Part shown: piece by piece, positions 18,681-60,601 of the stretch
How positions within the stretch are numbered: position 1 is the first letter of the stretch
Layout: every line of letters starts with the position of its first letter
Assembly: GCA_000320545.1 (NCBI GenBank)
Contig: ADNK01001791.1
Coordinates: 37,832-101,831 of the forward strand
Direction: 5' to 3'
Source of the DNA: Bigelowiella natans CCMP2755
Taxonomy: Eukaryota; Protista; Cercozoa
Length of the DNA stretch: 64,000 bases
Program-made: the position numbers and the translations under genes
Notes under the pieces: model-generated
Told to the model about the DNA's origin: nothing
Databases searched by the model: none
The model's input: only the letters and a program-made list of their open reading frames with translations

Positions 18681-18780
18681 CTAGATTAGGATAACAGCAG
18701 CCACTTTCTAGGTTTGAGTATGGATCTTCTCCTGTAAATTCTCATTTCTAGATTATGGTGACGGCACATAGTCTAGATAG

Positions 18781-19620
18781 CTAGATAGTCTAGAGTGTGC
18801 TAAAAATTCACAAGCAACGTTTCATTCAACTAGTCAAGCTAGCAAGGCTACAAGGTAGCATGTTGATCCCATTCATGACATCTCTCATGTAGCGTTACAT
18901 GAAATGAGTCTAGAAATACACTAGCACACGCCGCAGCTTGCTAGCTAGCTAGCTAGCTGGCATCGATCATTTGCATGTCTAGCAGTGGGCATGTCAAACA
19001 TTCTGTCATTACTAGATTGCAACATCGCTAGATCGCTAGCTAACTAGCGGTACATTTGTCAATGACAATTGTCAGCACATGCAGCACACTCCATTTCTAG
19101 CATTTGCAAGAAAACTGCATACTAGCATAGCTACACAGCATGCGATCACATGTCTAGATGTGTGTGATTAGCTCGAGAGCTGCAAGTGCAAGTTCAATTA
19201 GCGCTAGAGCGTTCGACATGCACGACAGGGACGAGACGCAGCTTCCGCAAGAGGAAAACTTTGAAACTGGACTTTTGAAGTTCTAGTTCCAAACAAAGAT
19301 GGAGTACCACGTTCTAGCGCCATAGCGTTCTAGCTAGCATACGATGATCTAGATGATCTAGTGATGGAGGCTAGGAGGGTGAGTCAACTCCATCTAGCTA
19401 TGCTGGCATGCGAAGACACCAATACCATCTAGCTATGCTGGCATGCGAAGATACCTACGCGCTGTGACACCGTTCAAGAAAAGAATTGAAATACATCTAA
19501 ACATCTCAACACGATCTAGATTTGTAAACTCTCTCTTCCATTCTAGTCAAAATCACTGCATTTTTGGATCAGTTCAAATCGAATGATACATCTAGACATC
19601 TAGATAGCTAAAATTGGTGT
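18781..19620. other. CTAG-rich, partly TpA-depleted spacer between convergent genes
   Basis: About 32 CTAG in ~840 nt by eye; many other surviving TAs are in CTA or TAG context. Confidence 0.85.
19390..19455. repeat. Tandem direct duplication with a 35-bp period (ccatctagctatgctggcatgcgaaga x2)
   Basis: Direct reading: copies start at 19390 and 19425. Confidence 0.9.
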
Positions 19621-21585: not shown

Positions 21586-22029
21586 TGTGTGTTATGTATC
21601 GTTAAGCTTTAAAGCTCTTTGCCTGTGCATATGCCTCATGGCATTTCCCCCCTAATGAGCAAATTCGTGCTCGTCGCAATAGAAAATAAAGCCGAATTAG
21701 GAACTATTTGTTTAACTGATGCCCTTCTAGTCGATCTGGGTGTCAGATCCCTGTTGTGTTGCGCGGGAAGTGGGTTTTTGCTGAGATCAGATAATTTTGT
21801 TGCCATCCAGCTCTATCTTGTAGAAGGAAATTCAAACCATTTTTCTCTTGCGTCAAACTCTGTAGGGTAGAGAAGGAAATATTTCTGAATGTCACATTCC
21901 TTGAAATTTGATAGAACGAAGTAATTATTTTTAACCATCAAATGACGATTCAATAAATGGGCGCAAAACCATGGTGTGGATAGTTTCCGTGTTCTTTCAC
22001 CTTAATTTCGTTTCGGATTCGATCGGATA

Positions 22030-22916
22030 GAAAACGACTTGGATGCTGCTCCTGCGACAAGGTGTCCAGTGTCCAATTCATTGCAATGAACAAAACTCAA
22101 CTTGGTGCATCTTGAGCTCAAGTGCCAAACGATTTCAATTTCACAGATCGCTTCATCAATTGTGCATCTCTGGACCTGTTCGGTGCGACATCTGTCGAAA
22201 TGAACATGAGAACATTGTCACTTTGGGAGCCTTTGCTGCCATGTCTTCAAAGGAAAAGCTGTGCCTTGCTCTGGGGGCACGATTTGGTGCACCTTCGACA
22301 GGCAAAGAAATCGACAGGGCTCCGCCGAATCGATGTCCAGCTCAATGATTTTGCTGCTGTGCGCCAATTTGGTGATTTTGTCCTTCGTCTCTGTGCTCCT
22401 AGTTTCTGTCACATGCAAACCCGATCGAGATGACTGATTTCAGCTTGAACTTGGACACACTCCACCTACTAGCCTGTTCCTCTCTAGCTCCCTGGCTCTC
22501 TAGCTCTGATCAACAGATCAACAGGCAGTTCACCTGGCCCCAACTCATTGTCCTTGGCTTCCTCAGTCACAGGACACTGTGTTAGTTTTGTTGCTCAACA
22601 CCAACAGGGTGCTGACAAGTCCTCGCAATGATTTTTGTTGAGGCGCTGCTGCACGCATGTCCAGCTAGCTAGATGTGCACGTCCCATCTGCATGGCCATG
22701 TGGTTCTTGCTCACGTGGTTTTTGCATCACTGGGTCAATGCTTCGTTCATTGTTCATTGTTCAACATGAATCAACCAATTCGTTGACCAATCGCTTTTGT
22801 CCGGTCATCATTTCAAGCAAAAAGTGACACCATTCTTGCAAGTCTGGAAGTGGTGATGAAAGTGCCAGCTCCAGAGATCTAGAGATGCCTGCCTGTGTGA
22901 CTGCATCAAGTCCATT
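22030..22916. other. TpA-erased intergenic tract 1
   Basis: 9 TA in 887 nt by eye: 7 CTAG, 1 CTAC, 1 TTAG. Confidence 0.9.
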
Positions 22917-24756: not shown

Positions 24757-25110
24757 GACCGCGAGGAGGAAGAAGCTTCGGGTTGTCACAGTACCGAAAT
24801 AATAACAAGAGAATGAAAAAAAAGAAAACAATAAAGCGGCTATTGTTAATTTGATGCCCCACCAACAAATGCTTGTAGATCAAGAAATACACCGAATACT
24901 TCGTAAAAGGATGCAATGACAAAGAGAAGTCACAGTCCCAAGTTGGCAAGGCACGAAAGAAAATGGAACCAGGAATGGAGGATGCACCTGGAAAAAAGCA
25001 ATTGGAAAAAAGATGGACGAGGATTTCAAATGAGATCTTCAAGCTCCTCGATGGCTGAAATGCCATTCTTGATTCCTTCTGGTTTCACTAGTTAGACCTC
25101 GCTAAAGTTA

Positions 25111-25664
25111 GTTCGAGGCACTGCGTTTCGCACACTGCAAATGTCTTGCAACGTTTTGGAAGTGCAGTTTGTCTGTGATCATTGTTTCATTGTTTCATTG
25201 TTTCTTTTGGGATCGACTGCATCCAGGCTGGTTCAGCTTGTGCATGCCTTCTCATGGGATGCCACACACAAGTGGCACGCATCTGCATCATCACGGAACA
25301 TGCGCCAGCCCACACATTGAGCTGGATCGACTTGCTAGCTTGTTGTGCGTGTGCAATTGCGCAGTTTTTGTTCGGAAAGCGAGGCGTCACACGCGTGAAC
25401 GGAATCACGCGATGTGCGGGCTGCTGTGTGTTCACAGTCCAGGTTGTCAGGCACAATCACAATTGTGATTTCGCTGCATGACGAGCACAATTTCAAATGC
25501 ACGATGCAACTCAAGTGTGACATGATCGAAATGCCATGGAATTTGCATCAGGTTTGACCCGCATGCACACATGCGTTTCCATTTTGCATTGTGCAAATGA
25601 ACCAATGCAATTGACTGCTGAGACGTGGCATGCATGCATGCGCCCTCATTGCAGCGCAGCTCAC
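25111..25664. other. TpA-erased intergenic tract 2
   Basis: A single TA (in CTAG, 25336) in 554 nt by eye. Confidence 0.9.
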
Positions 25665-30042: not shown

Positions 30043-30073
<31 letters not shown>

Positions 30074-32787: not shown

Positions 32788-33723
32788 TTACTTATTATCA
32801 TCACCGCCCTTATCATCGAAAGCACCAGTTATCGAAAGAATGATAATTATGATGACTGCAAGAACTATCATTGCTATTACGAAACAGATAAGCATTTTCT
32901 TTCTCGCGGCGAACTGATATTCTGCAGCAGCATGAAGTTCGACCACCGCCTCCCCAGTGTATTCCTTTGCTTGCGACACGTGGCAAGTAATATTGTCTAT
33001 TGTTTCTTGCTGCGCATCAACCAGTGCAGCCATTTCGTGGAACATCTCCAGAATCTCTTGTACGCCTTGGTTTATTTGTTTCACTTCATCAGCCTGAGCA
33101 AGCAAACGACCTAACTCTTGTTCCTCTCCGTTCATCTGCTGTTCAATAAACTGTTTATCCAAACCCTTCTCGATAAGTTCTTCAGCCTTCTCGGTTGTCA
33201 AATTATTGCTCAAGAACTTGAGGTCGCGCACCTGCCTGTTGTGTACCTTGTCTTTGAACATTTTCGCCAGAGAAGTGTATCTCTTGTGTGCCAGAAAGTA
33301 TTTTCGCATGTAGAAATTGTACATATTATCCCTGATCTCAACTTCAACGGAGCCATCTTCCCTAGAGTTTGACCTGAACTTCTCATTTTGATCCTTCAAC
33401 CCCCCCTTATCAGTCAGTGTCTTCTTCAAGCGGACAGATGAGGCCCGGGCCTTCTTGAGTTTCTTGTCAATATCTGAAATGATTCGATTTTTTTGCTCCT
33501 CAACGTATACGTTATCAATTTCTTCTTTAGCCTTGGCAATGTGATCACTACAAGCTTCAAGAAATTCAATGTCCTTCCTGATGGGTTCATACTTCGTTAG
33601 CTCCAACCGAAAACTCTCGTCTTCCTTTGAGTCAGCAGCACCGTTCTCTACATCCGTATCCCCCACGTTGACATCATCAAATCCGAAAAGTGTTATCAGA
33701 GAGTGCACTTGGGCCGACGGCAT
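32788..33723 (-). CDS. Intronless Qa-SNARE syntaxin (syntaxin-1/plasma-membrane type)
   Basis: Habc helices, SNARE motif INQGVQEILEMFHEMAALVDAQQETIDNITCHV, C-terminal TM MLICFVIAMIVLAVIIIIILSI. Confidence 0.93.
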   Translation of the reverse strand: MPSAQVHSLITLFGFDDVNVGDTDVENGAADSKEDESFRLELTKYEPIRKDIEFLEACSDHIAKAKEEIDNVYVEEQKNRIISDIDKKLKKARASSVRLKKTLTDKGGLKDQNEKFRSNSREDGSVEVEIRDNMYNFYMRKYFLAHKRYTSLAKMFKDKVHNRQVRDLKFLSNNLTTEKAEELIEKGLDKQFIEQQMNGEEQELGRLLAQADEVKQINQGVQEILEMFHEMAALVDAQQETIDNITCHVSQAKEYTGEAVVELHAAAEYQFAARKKMLICFVIAMIVLAVIIIIILSITGAFDDKGGDDNK

Positions 33724-34177
33724 GGTTCACCTGCGAAGACAGACATGTTTTGAGAAAGGTCTCCCAGATGGAAAAATTCAGCATCCACAGTGGATATTTA
33801 GATATGATTCGGCTGTAAGCCCCCCAGCTAGCAAACAAAACTCTGATACCTATTTCCCAGTCCTTCGGTTCCCTTCCCTCAAAAGATTGACGGACGAGAT
33901 ATGGGGAGGCGGGATGGAGGTTTGCAGTGTGTTCAACCGTATCAAGCAACTTTCAGATCGAAAGGTGTGAGAGAAAATTGTGCACAATCTCTATTTTATC
34001 CCTATAATTGCTTTATCTTTAAGTCTCTATCACTAAATGTAAGGCTTTAGGGTAAGTCACATATTCTGATGTTGAAAGTCTTCTTCTAAATCCAACCCAA
34101 GTAGAACGACCAAATCTTCTGAAAAACCAAAAGATGGCCTGCGTTTTGGGCAGCTTTTGGGGCAAAATCGCGACGTA

Positions 34178-35635
34178 ATGTCTCGAAAAATCTCTGGTGA
34201 ATCCAGAAAATCTCGCATTCTGATTCCATCGCGACATGGTTGCTGCGTGTTTGTGCGTGTCCAGATGTCCCCTTGTGGTTCTTGCTCATGTGCTCATGTG
34301 GTTTGCATCAATGATTCATTCATTGCTCATTGTTCATTGTTCATTGGCTGAAAATTGTTGTGGTTGTGAGAAAGAAAGACAAATTGCGTGACGATGCATC
34401 CCCCTCTAGCTAGCTAGCTAGCTGGCCCTTGTGTCGCAAGTGTCAGTGTTTGTGCGTCAGTTGCTTCTTCGTCCCGCCTTGATTGCAGTTTTTCACGTTC
34501 ACGTCGTCGAATTTTGTGCACATGGCTAGCTGGTCCCAAACCTTTCTCAAGGTCGAAGGTTTCGCTTGACGACGAACAATCCTGTTCCTTCTGCATCGCT
34601 TTCGTGGTTGCGGTGGTGCTCTCTGGCTCTCGGTGAGCTGCCGCGCAGTGTCGAGTTCCCGGGCAAGGAAACACGTCTTTGAGGATGAACTCATCAAATT
34701 TCTGTCGATAATCCTCCATCTGAATCGTTTGCAGCCACTCGACGTAGCCCGGATCGACCATCACACCGCACACCGCGCAAGCATGGCTGTTGCACGTTCC
34801 TGGACAACAAGAGCACGAGCACATGTCGTTCTGCTCAGCGAGGTCGATTTGATGGCATCCGTGAGCTCGTCGACCGCTTGGATGCGATTTTTCAACAAAC
34901 GTGACACATGCTCATGATGGACAAAGCAATGTGACATGCACGTCACTAGCTAGCTAGATCACATGTGCAACGTGCAGCGTCTGGACGTTGCACGTCCATC
35001 ACATTGTGATCGTTCAGCGTTTGTGACGTTCCCGCCCTTTTCGCCTTTTGCGACTCGTGAGAACGCAAATGAATCGCGCAAACTAGCAAATCACGTTGCG
35101 ACGCGACTTGACTCCTTGCAAGTTCGTTCGTGACCTGCACAAGCGCGCACACGTGGCTTTGCGTATGTTTGCTGCCACACGACACGTGCAGTGGTGCGTG
35201 CACTGCGGCGAGGCGTGACACGAGTTGCGACATGAACACTTCGCTCTGAACTCACGTTGCACGCACATTGCACACACGTGCGCGCGCGTGCAGCCACGTG
35301 TCACGCAACTGCATGGATGTGTAGATGCTCACACATGACGATGATGACATTTTGCTCTTTAGCTCTGTGTCCACACAAGCGATGCGATGCAGCAACAAAA
35401 AAGAAATGCGTCGCAAATTTAGCGTTCATTCGGTTGTGAGCAACTTTCGTGTGTTGTGTCCATTGTTTTCGAACTCTTTGCTTCAAGAAAGATAAGAACG
35501 ATGCAACGCAAGTTGATCTCTCATGTGTGCTTGAGATCAGGTGGACACTCTTTGCACGTCACGCACTCATTGTGACTGCTTCTTGATGTCTTGCTCACGG
35601 AACAGCCAACTTTCTTTCTTTTGATCCACAAAGGG
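34178..35635. other. TpA-erased intergenic tract 3 (largest)
   Basis: 16 TA in 1458 nt by eye: 9 CTAG, 2 GTAG, 2 TTAG, 2 ATAA, 1 GTAT. Confidence 0.9.
34414..34824 (-). pseudogene. Possible decayed coding fragment with a partial SAM-domain-like segment
   Basis: VEWLQTIQMEDYRQKFDEF resembles the SAM helix 1-2 pattern V.EWL..I.M..Y...F; the rest is C/H-rich and does not complete the domain. Confidence 0.3.
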
Positions 35636-35649
35636 TAAGTCAAAGATGG

Positions 35650-36327
35650 TCAAAATCCGCGAATCCCCACCTGAAGTACATGCATGTGAACTGCTGCCAC
35701 TTGTAATGAAACAAATAACCATGTAGTAAAATCTACAAAGGACAGGAAATTCATCGAAAGAAATATTGAATTTAGATTTTCACCATGATCTGGATCGTAT
35801 CCCCCTTTCAAAACGACATGGGATTCTACAAATTCTTTCAGTTCCTTTTCATCTCCAAACTAACCAAACAAGAAAATTGAAAACTTAATCGGAAGACATG
35901 CGTAAAAATCACTTGATTATTGGCCAAATAGAAATACAAACTTCTCCACACTTCTTTCGAAGAACATGTGGCTAGGCAAGGCAATCTCACCGGAAATAAG
36001 TCGCGGAAGTACTCGGTGTAGATATTCTGAAGCTGGATGGCATAGAGAAAGGGATGTAAACGAAAAAGTATAGGTAGATAGCCATGCCAAAATATGCCCA
36101 TTCAAGTGGATACGAGACTAATGAGAGTAGGTGCATTTCATTGTCTGTTGATTTTTCGTTGTGACGTATTCGACTCGATCGCGGCTCGATCTCTCAACCA
36201 CCTCGCCAACCCCCCCCTGCATACACATTTGAACTCTACTCGCCTAAACTTCGGTTTGAAAACACTTCATCATGTCGCACCACAGAACCGATGATCTACT
36301 TCGATTAGATGTACTTGCTACATATGT

Positions 36328-47748: not shown

Positions 47749-47769
47749 CTAGCTAACACGCTGGTGCTA

Positions 47770-48411
47770 AATGCAGCTTGTGCGATGATGAGTGTGCACA
47801 AGAACACAGAAGCACTCACCGCTGTGGCATTCATCTCCAGTCACATCACTGTGTTGGTTCATTTGAGCTGTGCTGGCATGCATGCACAATGGCAATGCAT
47901 GCATTTTGTTGAAGCATTGCGAGGCATTGAGATGTGCATCAATGGATCACAAAGACGAATTTGCTTCAGGTGTGGCATGCACAGATTCCACGCCCAGTGC
48001 GATGCACACGTTCACACAGCTAGACAGACGGATGTGTGTGCGTGCACTGTGAACAACAATGCACGTGCACCACGTTCATTTTGCACTCAGTGTGGTCATC
48101 ACTGCACGCACGTGCACGTCGCAGTGACGTGCAATCAAACGTGACGAGCTGCATGTTTGCGATGCGAGCTGTGGCTTGCTCGAAATACAACAATGCCCCA
48201 ATTTTTTTGCGGCGCACAACTGCTCACACACGCCAGCACGGGTGCCAGCATGCACGGGATGCCAGCGCGAGTCGCATCACGCGTTGCAGCCGGCCCGTCT
48301 AGCCGTGTTGCTGCGTGTGCTCGTGTGCTCGACAGGCTTCAAGAGGTTCCCTGTTGATCATCACATGCTGGCATGAGTGCCAAGAGTGTTGCGAGTGCTG
48401 GCTGACACCAG
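47770..48411. other. TpA-erased intergenic tract 4
   Basis: 3 TA in 642 nt by eye: 2 CTAG, 1 ATAC. Confidence 0.9.
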
Positions 48412-48858
48412 TAGTCATCCATCATTGCAATTCGGAACGACGACCTCCAATTTCACCCAAAAAAATAAGTCGTCATCCATAGGATGTCGCTGGTATAAAT
48501 ATGAGGCCATTTTTCAACAATCTCGGTCTCTCTGGAAGGATACGACGACCGCCAGGATCAGTTCTTCCCCCCCTCTTTGCGAATCACTGGTGCGTCATGA
48601 CTATGGGCGCCATACAATCATTTGCTACCCATAAAGCACGATCGGCAGTGTGGCCTCATTCCAACATATTCCACCTTCTGTCTTCGTGCTTGTCATATCA
48701 CTTGAGACTTCACTGTGCATCAATTGTCGCATCGGCGCGTGTTGCTCATGCATACACGGCTGAAAACTTGAACTACTCCAAACCATTAGCTAGTGTTACG
48801 TGTCTCACTAGAAGGTTTTGGTTATAATAGATACGATCAGCGGAAATTTATACCTTCG

Positions 48859-60116: not shown

Positions 60117-60197
60117 ATTAGTATAAATACTGTCTCTACGACGCATTCCAATATCCACTTCTTCGATGCTATGCCTCCTTCGCATCATCATAGTCAG

Positions 60198-60232
<35 letters not shown>

Positions 60233-60233
60233 C

Positions 60234-60521
60234 CTTGGAGTCATCCCTCGTATTTTCAGAGCGTGCACGAAGAAGTGATGCATGGTGCAAGCGGATAAGC
60301 CAGGAATTCACAACCCGCGACCTCTCACTCTCGCTCTCAGCAGCGCAGTGTTCGCTGCCCGAATCCTTCCATCGAAGAAGTCGGTTGGTTGACGTGAAAA
60401 GGGGGATGAGAACATCCTGTGCGAGGAAACGTAGCCCCCTTGCGCCAACCCCAGTCAGGAGAGCAGCAGCAGTGAATTGAACAAGCGTTGTTGATGATGA
60501 TGAAGATGAAGACACCTCCAT
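60234..60521 (-). CDS. Probable first exon of the EXD2-like gene, with an N-terminal hydrophobic anchor
   Basis: MEVSSSSSSSTTLVQFTAAALLTGVGARGLRFL...; donor AAG|GTGATG. Animal EXD2 has an N-terminal TM anchor. Linking exons not fully phased. Confidence 0.4.
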
Positions 60522-60601
60522 GCGGTGAGGACGTGATAACGTACTATCCGTAGTGAAGAGAAGAAGGCGCATCCCAGCAACAAAGACTGTTCCTATGTGT
60601 A

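What the first reader, a model, noticed from the sequence alone, without database searches (positions are those of the whole stretch)
34178..35635. Largest TpA-erased tract (1.46 kb) with a graded survival hierarchy
16 TA in 1458 nt: 9 CTAG (protected on both strands under the model), 4 xTAG (protected on one strand), only 3 unprotected. This ordering is what a per-strand TAH-targeting process predicts. The tract contains perfect purine/pyrimidine mosaics (cacacacgtgcgcgcgcgtgca at ~35271-35292) that could be fossil (TA)n arrays. It begins ~15 bp past the putative stop of the upstream gene and ends 455 bp before the syntaxin ATG.
Basis: partly seen in the sequence, partly recalled or inferred. 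Interest (0 to 1): 0.88.

Follow-up and report, generated by a model that had tools for sequence, protein, structure and literature searches.

The report
TpA-erased relic of giant-virus DNA
A 1.5-kb stretch upstream of a syntaxin gene in the alga Bigelowiella natans has lost almost all its TA dinucleotides; it contains a broken fragment of a giant-virus gene, and it looks like the end product of the TA-to-TG/CA hypermutation of foreign DNA that a 2026 preprint measured in this species.

Summary
There are 16 TA in 34178-35635: 9 CTAG, 4 xTAG and 3 others. The best TA-poor segment (34103-35676) scores 46.8, against at most 11.9 in 200 Markov nulls.

A 2026 bioRxiv preprint on Bigelowiella natans mutation-accumulation lines reports A:T>G:C hypermutation only at TpA in integrated giant-virus and virophage DNA.

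New here:
- The tract core (34470-34898, minus strand) is a frameshifted fragment of NCLDV gene Bigna1 129981. It is 90% identical to a viral-contig copy.
- The two copies differ by 31 transitions and 7 transversions, including 5 adjacent TG<->CA double differences (0.33 expected). This is the footprint of one ancestral TA resolved independently in each copy.
- My re-tally of the preprint's mutation table gives a 3'-neighbour order T>A>C>G. TAG is about 2-4 times less mutable, not immune.
- CTAG is over-retained beyond that, yet it is both lost and gained.

The "fossil (TA)n" reading cannot be decided. Origin of the other 73% of the tract is unresolved.

This is a new member of a known kind. 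Other unchecked notes from this scan describe the same islands elsewhere in this genome.

The parts
34103..35676 (.). TpA-erased tract, taken as the maximal-scoring TA-poor segment.
   Evidence: It has 18 TA in 1574 nt, rho TA 0.19, CA/TG 1.51, GG/CC 0.52 and GC 50%. Its score is 46.8 against a null maximum of 11.9.
34470..34898 (-). Pseudogene fragment of an NCLDV ORFan gene. It is homologous to about aa 68-200 of Bigna1 129981 (P0002/P0003).
   Evidence: phmmer against 1.84e9 representatives gave a single hit, E 1e-24, named EP00466_Bigelowiella_natans_P006831, aug1.10_g4689. blastn gave 85% identity over 401 columns to L014:10202-10575. There are 391 aligned bases at 90% identity, and 7 indels totalling 33 extra bases break the frame.
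34406..34423 (.). (CTAG)4.5 tandem array, about 45 bp beyond the left end of the viral homology.
   Evidence: Tandem Repeats Finder found period 4 at 100% match. It holds 4 of the 16 surviving TA.
34944..34958 (.). (CTAG)3 array, about 45 bp beyond the right end of the viral homology.
   Evidence: Read from the sequence. It holds 3 of the 16 surviving TA.
34183..34351 (+). Segment shared with another TpA-erased tract (22601-22778). The clear core is 34271-34343 = 22696-22763.
   Evidence: blastn gave 76% identity over 74 nt, E 8e-8. The purine/pyrimidine-coded extension scores 49, which is within the null range.
35100..35380 (.). Block rich in alternating purine/pyrimidine steps, including the perfect 24-nt run at 35269-35292.
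   Evidence: The alternation fraction is 0.69, against 0.50 for the window. In purine/pyrimidine coding it matches host (TA)n/(TG)n/(CA)n compound microsatellites.
34049..34059 (+). Left copy of the 11-nt direct repeat AGGGTAAGTCA.
   Evidence: It is one of only two copies in the window, and the two copies bracket the tract. However, flank repeats of 11 nt or more occur in 7% of random window pairs.
35632..35642 (+). Right copy of the 11-nt direct repeat AGGGTAAGTCA, at the sharp right edge of the tract.
32788..33930 (-). Neighbouring host gene, a syntaxin-like SNARE. The CDS is 32788-33723, the 5'UTR intron 33731-33849 and the mRNA 5' end 33930. The tract lies 173-248 bp upstream of it.
   Evidence: Pfam SNARE matched at E 6.6e-10. 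Four MMETSP transcript contigs, L001-L004, align to it.

Best explanation
The window is nuclear DNA of the chlorarachniophyte alga Bigelowiella natans. The tract is a relic of foreign DNA. At least its 430-bp core is a fragment of a giant-virus (NCLDV) gene.

The tract's TpA dinucleotides have been almost completely converted to TpG or CpA by the host's TpA-specific A:T>G:C hypermutation. This is the process seen at about 1000 times the background rate in integrated NCLDV and virophage DNA of mutation-accumulation lines.

Each conversion hits one strand of the palindromic TpA step. An ancestral TA therefore ends as TG or CA at random. G+C rises by several points, CA/TG rise, and GG/CC fall relative to base composition.

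The rate depends on the base 3' of the target A (T > A > C > G). The last survivors are therefore mostly TAG, and above all CTAG, which has the slow context on both strands. Short (CTAG)n microsatellites can persist or grow where other TA-containing repeats are destroyed.

Shown by the preprint: the TpA specificity and the rate.
Shown here: the end-state signature, the viral paralogue, the TG<->CA footprints and the 3'-neighbour bias.
Inferred: the chemistry (adenine deamination to inosine, as the preprint proposes with an ADAT2-like candidate), how foreign DNA is recognised, and that erosion happened at this locus rather than before insertion.
For: - Signature: rho TA 0.19, CA/TG 1.51, GG/CC 0.52.
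- Simulation: in-silico erosion of ordinary host or viral sequence, using context rates derived from the mutation-accumulation data, gives rho TA 0.16, CA/TG 1.4-1.7, GG/CC 0.67-0.78 and G+C 47-50%.
- Organism and viral link: the only relative of the tract ORF among 1.84e9 proteins is B. natans model aug1.10_g4689, on scaffold 10, which holds the hypermutable NCLDV.
- Viral contig: its 98%-identical twin sits on a 43-kb contig of compact intronless ORFs with Pox_VLTF3, NUDIX and DUF5767. That contig has GC 46.8%, rho TA 0.41 and TA 2.9%. The preprint gives GC 45.5%, rho 0.45 and TA 3.3% for the NCLDV region.
- Paralogue comparison: 31 transitions against 7 transversions, 5 TG<->CA doubles (expected 0.33, P<5e-5) and 3 TA>TG/CA sites.
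- Survivor contexts pooled over 5 tracts: 39 TA, of which 20 are CTAG (14 loci after collapsing arrays), 11 are one-sided TAG and 8 are others. Outside the tracts the shares are 4.8%, 31% and 64% (chi-square on the collapsed counts 14/11/8, p about 1e-23).
- Mutation-accumulation table: TAG-class events are 20 of 206 on scaffold 10, against 22% of available sites (binomial p 5e-6). Relative rates are TAT 1.65, TAA 1.28, TAC 0.77, TAG 0.44.
Against: - Only 27% of the tract has a detectable viral homologue. The flanks match nothing in 39.5 kb of the virus, in IMG/VR or in Pfam.
- The flanks are 'viral-like' only by a dinucleotide classifier, and the alternating purine/pyrimidine block looks host-like.
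- The CG excess (rho 1.15) is not produced by a strict TpA rule.
- CTAG is retained about 3 times more than the mutation-accumulation rates predict.
- The site-availability baseline comes from a contig of a 98%-identical relative, not from the reference scaffold.
- No mutation has been observed at this locus itself.
- The window's organism is inferred, not given.
Confidence: 0.8

Rival explanations
1. Leakage. Only the 430-bp viral fragment was foreign, and hypermutation spread from it into about 1.1 kb of ordinary host intergenic DNA, as fungal RIP leaks into flanks. The tract would then be mostly eroded host sequence.
For: - The flanks have no viral homologue.
- The 35100-35380 block resembles host compound microsatellites in purine/pyrimidine coding, and its alternation (0.69) exceeds the maximum in the viral contig (0.66).
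- A segment of the left flank is shared with another island at 22.6 kb.
- Three other islands in the window are compositionally host-like.
Against: - The flanks of this tract score viral-like: LLR +0.008 per nt, against -0.0095 +/- 0.0066 for eroded host pieces, of which 3 of 46 score above 0.
- The right edge is sharp, within about 30 bp.
- The preprint did not describe spreading from the scaffold-10 or scaffold-146 regions as a mechanism, although it did extend the NCLDV region by 21 kb on mutation rate.
Confidence: 0.3
2. Same outcome, different chemistry. The target is the T of TpA, for example oxidised or otherwise modified thymine that mispairs with G, rather than adenine deamination. 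Because TpA is its own reverse complement, the two give identical sequence footprints.
For: - Every event can be read as N-T*-A with a 5'-neighbour order A>T>G>C, just as well as T-A*-N with T>A>C>G.
- The 3'-G disfavour is the opposite of the 3'-G preference I recall for ADAR enzymes (my own knowledge, not tested here).
Against: - The preprint identifies an ADAT2-like deaminase with DNA-editing-type residues.
- A 5' T before the edited A matches U33-A34 of ADAT/TadA tRNA substrates (established knowledge).
- No thymine-modifying enzyme was examined here.
Confidence: 0.2
3. There is no directed mutation. The tract is a compositional island kept TA-poor by selection, for example as a promoter or nucleosome-excluding element of the syntaxin gene, or by stop-codon avoidance in a former coding sequence.
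For: - It lies 173-248 bp upstream of the syntaxin transcript start.
- Islands in this genome sit mostly between genes (and unchecked scan notes).
- CG and G+C are raised, as in promoter islands.
Against: - TG<->CA double differences between paralogues are a mutational footprint, not a selective one.
- The core is a frameshifted pseudogene.
- Depletion is far below coding levels (rho 0.19, against 0.35-0.55 in exon-rich segments).
- The same signature occurs in transcriptionally silent viral DNA.
Confidence: 0.05

Closest known systems
TpA-specific hypermutation of integrated NCLDV and virophage DNA in Bigelowiella natans (Mettrop et al., bioRxiv 10.64898/2026.01.13.699255, 2026)
   Same: - Same organism.
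- Same TA>TG/CA direction.
- Same long-term signature of low rho TpA with high rho CpA+TpG.
- Same viral source, since the homologue of the tract core is a scaffold-10 gene model.
   Different: - This tract is 1.6 kb. That is below the preprint's cluster definition of three consecutive 1-kb windows.
- It is far more eroded: rho 0.19, against 0.45 for the NCLDV region.
- It sits as an isolated fragment beside a normal host gene.
- The preprint text does not mention any 3'-neighbour effect, CTAG, or paralogue footprints.
Repeat-induced point mutation (RIP) of fungi
   Same: Both make context-specific transitions that inactivate selfish or foreign DNA in the germ line of a microbe. Both leave a dinucleotide-skewed 'fossil' with sharp compositional contrast to its neighbours.
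   Different: - RIP converts CpA to TpA. It therefore enriches TpA and lowers G+C, which is the mirror image of this tract.
- RIP needs duplicated sequence and the sexual cycle. The B. natans NCLDV target is single-copy, and mutation occurred in asexual lines.
Adenosine deaminases acting on polynucleotides (ADAT2/3, TadA, ADAR)
   Same: All produce an A>G outcome with a requirement or preference for U/T immediately 5' of the edited A. The preprint proposes an ADAT2-like enzyme, Bn78255.
   Different: - Their natural substrates are RNA.
- The ADAR 3'-neighbour preference, as I recall it, favours G, whereas G is least favoured here.
- No enzyme was tested here.
APOBEC3-type hypermutation of viral DNA
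   Same: It is a host deaminase defence that riddles foreign DNA with one class of transition in a fixed dinucleotide context.
   Different: - APOBEC3 deaminates cytosine (C>T/G>A), acts on single-stranded replication intermediates, and gives strand-coordinated runs.
- In this tract TG and CA are interleaved at random (runs test z 0.2).

Membership tests
B. natans TpA-hypermutated DNA (Mettrop et al. 2026) | [quoted passage not shown] | tested here: met
   rho TA is 0.19 and CA/TG is 1.51 over the whole segment. The CA/TG value sits on the cut-off, and 500-nt windows give 1.42-1.58.
B. natans TpA-hypermutated DNA (Mettrop et al. 2026) | Differences from related copies are A:T>G:C transitions at TpA | tested here: met
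   Against L014 there are 31 transitions and 7 transversions. Thirteen of 38 mismatches lie in steps that are TA, TG or CA in both copies, including 5 TG<->CA doubles (expected 0.33).
B. natans TpA-hypermutated DNA (Mettrop et al. 2026) | Target is of foreign (viral or transposon) origin | tested here: inconclusive
   The core 34470-34898 is a fragment of an NCLDV gene. The remaining 73% has no homologue and gives only a viral-like dinucleotide score.
B. natans TpA-hypermutated DNA (Mettrop et al. 2026) | Locus lies in the B. natans nuclear genome | tested here: met
   - The only protein relative is a B. natans model.
- The window protein is held by the MMETSP and EukProt sources, not NCBI.
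- Window GC is 45.2%, against the published 44.9%.
- This identification is inferred, not stated by any tool.
B. natans TpA-hypermutated DNA (Mettrop et al. 2026) | Raised de novo mutation rate at the locus in mutation-accumulation lines | not testable with these tools
   Scaffold coordinates of the window are unknown and no read data are available. With only 16-18 TA left, few events would be expected.
Fungal RIP | C>T at CpA giving TpA enrichment, in duplicated DNA | tested here: not met
   TpA is depleted 5-fold and G+C is raised. The direction is opposite.
ADAR-type A-to-I hyperediting | 5' U preference together with 3' G preference, on double-stranded RNA | tested here: not met
   The 5' T requirement is met, but 3' G is the least mutable neighbour (relative rate 0.44). 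The changes are heritable DNA changes. The ADAR preference itself is recalled from memory, not checked here.

The most novel reading that the evidence does not exclude
Short TpA-erased islands are not rare curiosities but a pervasive archive. This window alone has 4-5 of them, about 6.7% of its length, and most are below the preprint's cluster threshold.

They would record many small insertions of viral or other foreign DNA that were neutralised by editing and now sit in promoters of ordinary host genes.

The excess and turnover of CTAG, which is both lost and gained and forms arrays flanking the viral fragment, would point to a second, unknown layer. That could be a CTAG-specific DNA modification or binding factor that blocks editing, or CTAG arrays laid down at insertion junctions.
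Probability: 0.25. Interest if true: 0.75.

Novelty: new member of a known kind. Interest (0 to 1): 0.5.

Why it matters
The preprint's claim of a 'reverse-RIP' genome defence rests on two large viral regions and on compositional statistics. This tract adds independent, sequence-level evidence.

- A viral gene fragment and its paralogue carry the exact footprint expected: the same ancestral TA resolved to TG in one copy and CA in the other.
- The process runs to near completion in small islands next to working host genes.
- The 3'-neighbour order (T>A>C>G) extracted from the published mutation table is a concrete biochemical fingerprint. Any candidate deaminase must reproduce it, and it argues against an ADAR-like preference.
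- The order also explains why TAG and CTAG dominate the survivors.

The phenomenon itself is already described, so this refines rather than discovers it.

Tried and rejected
- Repeat family within the window: blastn of the tract against the window finds only a 70-bp repeat shared with the island at 22.7 kb. Purine/pyrimidine-coded (transition-blind) blast adds only microsatellite-like matches within the null range.
- Transcription: the exact product of the 136-aa ORF is not on record. No protein from the tract appears among 1.84e9 representatives. This is weak evidence that it is not in assembled transcripts.
- Coding relics in the flanks: Pfam at E<=10 on seven tract ORFs found nothing. tblastn of all 1156 window ORFs against 39.5 kb of the viral contig hit only the core. 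Two IMG/VR scans found nothing. The search for homologous proteins with P0002 found only itself.
- Target-site duplication: the 11-nt AGGGTAAGTCA repeat brackets the tract, but repeats of equal length flank 7% of random pairs, and the other islands have none. Not accepted as evidence of insertion.
- Strand-coordinated editing patches: none found; the runs test gives z 0.2.
- Rfam: no RNA family in the window.
- Upstream minus-strand gene: not identifiable by Pfam.
Full report
**1. Observation**

Base composition predicts about 88 TA.

The dinucleotide odds are:

| Dinucleotide | Odds ratio |
|---|---|
| TA | 0.18 |
| CA | 1.59 |
| TG | 1.53 |
| GC | 1.30 |
| CG | 1.15 |
| CC | 0.50 |
| GG | 0.44 |

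A log-odds segmentation puts the tract at 34103-35676 (18 TA in 1574 nt). Its score is 46.8. The best segment in 200 first-order Markov simulations of the window averaged 7.5 and never exceeded 11.9.

Four more segments share the TA-poor, CA/TG-rich signature: 22029-22916, 24905-25664, 47769-48465 and, weakly, 60192-60536. Together these cover about 6.7% of the window. Other TA-poor segments have normal CA/TG and are exon-like.

Seven of the nine CTAG lie in two small tandem arrays, so the tract has four independent CTAG loci.

**2. Surroundings**

A syntaxin-like SNARE gene lies on the minus strand (CDS 32788-33723, Pfam SNARE E 6.6e-10). Four transcript contigs from MMETSP-derived JGI assemblies match it. 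They show a 119-nt 5'UTR intron (33731-33849) and an mRNA 5' end at 33930.

The tract therefore begins 173-248 bp upstream of that transcript. The gene said to end just right of the tract could not be identified. Rfam finds nothing in the window.

**3. What the literature already says**

A full-text search found a 2026 preprint, bioRxiv 10.64898/2026.01.13.699255 (Mettrop et al.).

- In Bigelowiella natans mutation-accumulation lines, 231 of 302 nuclear point mutations fall in an integrated NCLDV (scaffold 10, 186 kb) and a virophage region (scaffold 146).
- The rate there is about 1000 times background.
- Nearly all are A>G or T>C, and all of those fall on TpA.
[quoted passage not shown] They propose a defence by adenine deamination, with an ADAT2-like candidate.
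- The text says nothing about the base 3' of the target, about CTAG, or about paralogue comparisons.

No other paper on this was found.

**4. The tract contains a broken giant-virus gene**

*The homologue.* The longest stop-to-stop frame in the tract (34417-34911, minus strand, 165 aa) was searched with phmmer against 1.84e9 cluster representatives. It gave one hit, P0002 (E 1e-24, 64% identity). P0002 is EP00466_Bigelowiella_natans_P006831, or jgi/Bigna1/129981/aug1.10_g4689, a model on scaffold 10. It has no other relatives.

*The viral contig.* A 98%-identical copy, P0003, lies on a 43-kb contig assembled from run ERR12177241.

- I fetched 39.5 kb of it (L014-L016).
- It is packed with intronless ORFs on both strands, including Pox_VLTF3 (an NCLDV core gene), NUDIX and DUF5767.
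- It has GC 46.8%, rho TA 0.41 and TA 2.9%.
- The preprint's figures for the NCLDV region are GC 45.5%, rho 0.45 and TA 3.3%.

*The alignment.* blastn aligns L014:10202-10575 with window 34898-34498 on the minus strand at 85% over 401 columns. Nothing else in the window matches the contig at DNA or protein level.

- Over 391 aligned bases identity is 90%.
- Seven indels, all extra bases in the window copy and several of them small tandem duplications, shift the frame repeatedly.
- The viral copy is an intact 490-codon ORF.

The window copy is thus a pseudogene fragment covering roughly residues 68-200.

*Organism.* The B. natans homologue, the MMETSP and EukProt sources of the window's own protein and the matching G+C (45.2% against 44.9%) identify the window as B. 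natans nuclear DNA. This is an inference.

**5.

Of 38 mismatches between the two copies, 31 are transitions.

- Five are adjacent double differences in which one copy has TG and the other CA. This is what independent resolution of one ancestral TA gives. With the same numbers of transitions and transversions placed at random, the expectation is 0.33, and none of 20000 simulations reached 5.
- Three further steps are TA in the viral copy and TG or CA in the window.
- Six more steps are CG against CA/TG.

Both copies have therefore been eroded since they separated. Whether the window copy was eroded at this locus or earlier cannot be told from the sequence.

**6. The survival hierarchy**

*Pooled counts.* Pooled over the five islands there are 39 TA: 20 CTAG (14 loci after collapsing arrays), 11 with TAG on one strand and 8 with neither. 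Outside the islands the shares are 4.8%, 31% and 64% (chi-square on the collapsed counts 14/11/8, p about 1e-23). Normalised for length, retention is about 1.2 for CTAG, 0.13 for one-sided TAG and 0.05 for the rest.

*Tally of the published mutation table.* I tallied the 3-nt contexts in the preprint's Table S2 by hand and confirmed every total by whole-word counts.

| Context (A>G / T>C) | Count |
|---|---|
| TAA / TTA | 36 / 38 |
| TAT / ATA | 41 / 40 |
| TAC / GTA | 25 / 32 |
| TAG / CTA | 4 / 19 |

The TAG class is 23 of 235 events.

*Relative rates.* For the 206 scaffold-10 events, I used site counts from the 39.5-kb viral contig as a proxy. Relative rates are TAT 1.65, TAA 1.28, TAC 0.77 and TAG 0.44 (chi-square p 1.6e-8; TAG binomial p 5e-6). 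So 3' G is disfavoured about 2- to 4-fold but is not protective in an absolute sense.

*Fit to the survivors.* With these rates, a one-parameter erosion model fits nine of the ten NTAN classes. The Spearman correlation between rate and retention is -0.61 (p 0.06). The model predicts 4.4 CTAG loci where 14 are seen (p 2e-4).

*CTAG turnover.* CTAG is not simply immune.

- The viral copy's TCTAGG is TCCAGG in the window (34802).
- The window has a 10-bp insertion containing GCTAGC that the viral copy lacks.
- (CTAG)3-4 arrays sit about 45 bp outside each end of the homology.

My reading is that slow-mutating CTAG microsatellites persist or grow where other TA-bearing repeats are destroyed. A specific protection of CTAG is not excluded.

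**7. Does erosion explain the whole composition?**

I applied the mutation-accumulation-derived rates in silico, until TA reached 1.1%, to host sequence and to the viral contig.

| Measure | Simulated | Observed |
|---|---|---|
| rho TA | 0.16 | 0.15-0.19 |
| CA/TG | 1.42-1.73 | 1.51-1.67 |
| GG/CC | 0.67-0.78 | 0.52-0.59 |
| G+C | 47-50% | 50% |

The fall of GG/CC follows because new G and C are created next to T or A, and rarely next to G or C. The CG excess of this tract is not reproduced from host ancestors. It fits a viral ancestor better.

A symmetric dinucleotide classifier was trained on eroded host pieces against eroded viral pieces. It separates them well: 3 of 46 host pieces and 35 of 35 viral pieces score positive. 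It gives +0.011 for the core, +0.010 for the right flank and +0.004 for the left flank, that is, viral-like. Islands 22, 47 and 60 score host-like.

Against this, the 35100-35380 block has a purine/pyrimidine alternation of 0.69, typical of host compound microsatellites and just above the viral maximum of 0.66. The origin of the flanks is therefore open: either the whole 1.6 kb is foreign, or editing leaked into host DNA.

**8. The 'fossil (TA)n' idea**

The perfect mosaic at 35269-35292 contains many CG steps. A strict TpA rule cannot make CG from TA. An extant (CA)7(CG)7 array at 30043-30071, outside any island, is 91% identical to it. The idea is possible for the TG/CA part but is neither needed nor demonstrable.

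**9. Other checks**

- TG and CA are interleaved at random along the tract (runs z 0.2). There are no long strand-coordinated patches of the APOBEC kind.
- The 11-nt AGGGTAAGTCA occurs only at 34049 and 35632 and brackets the tract. Equally long flank repeats occur in 7% of random pairs in this repeat-rich window. I do not count it as a target-site duplication.
- The left flank shares about 70-170 bp with the island at 22.6 kb.
- No protein from the tract is on record, which hints that it is not in assembled transcripts.
- The one metagenome scan gave only chance hits.

**10. Verdict**

The phenomenon was published as a preprint in 2026, so the finding is a new member of a known kind. What this work adds:
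- the viral identity of the core;
- the TG<->CA footprint;
- the 3'-neighbour order extracted from published data;
- the unexplained CTAG excess;
- the indication that small islands below the preprint's cluster threshold are common.

Unchecked notes from this scan report the same kind of island on many other pieces of this genome.

Nothing in this work required a referred step.

Noticed in passing
Preprint Table S2; viral contig L014-L016: Among TpA events in the mutation-accumulation lines, the slow class is strand-asymmetric: 4 A>G at TAG against 19 T>C at CTA (binomial about 0.003). The other three classes are balanced, and TAG (249) and CTA (252) are equally frequent in the 39.5-kb viral contig. 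This is unexplained.
   Followed up: partly
window 34802, 34522-34531, 34406-34423, 34944-34958: CTAG turns over inside the tract. One CTAG of the viral paralogue is CCAG here. A 10-bp insertion carrying GCTAGC is absent from the paralogue. (CTAG)3-4 arrays sit about 45 bp outside each end of the viral homology.
   Followed up: partly
window 34049-34059 and 35632-35642: The 11-nt direct repeat AGGGTAAGTCA is found only twice in 64 kb, and the two copies bracket the tract. It may be a target-site duplication, but the chance level in this window is about 7%.
   Followed up: yes
window 34470-34898 vs L014:10202-10600: All seven indels between the copies are extra bases in the window copy (33 nt in total). 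Several are small tandem duplications, which suggests an insertion-biased slippage regime in neutral DNA of this microsatellite-rich genome.
   Followed up: no
window 22029-22916, 24905-25664, 47769-48465, 60192-60536: Four further TpA-erased islands were found. None matches the 39.5-kb viral contig. By dinucleotide profile, three look like eroded host DNA rather than NCLDV DNA, so the targets may be heterogeneous (virophage, transposon, or leakage).
   Followed up: partly
window 18768-19604: This is a CTAG-rich spacer with several 8-9-nt CTAG-containing tandem repeats and an (AGCT)6 array identical to the array in the tract. Another note from this scan flagged it.
   Followed up: no
L014-L016 (Logan contig ERR12177241_174209): This NCLDV-like contig carries Pox_VLTF3, NUDIX, DUF5767 and a 2194-aa ORF. 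Its copy of Bigna1 129981 differs from the reference model at 10 of 490 residues, so it comes from a different strain or haplotype of the integrated virus, or from a free relative.
   Followed up: partly
window 33731-33849 (minus strand); L002: The syntaxin gene has a canonical GT-AG 119-nt intron in its 5'UTR. One of the four transcript assemblies (L002) differs from the window at two positions, which suggests strain polymorphism.
   Followed up: no
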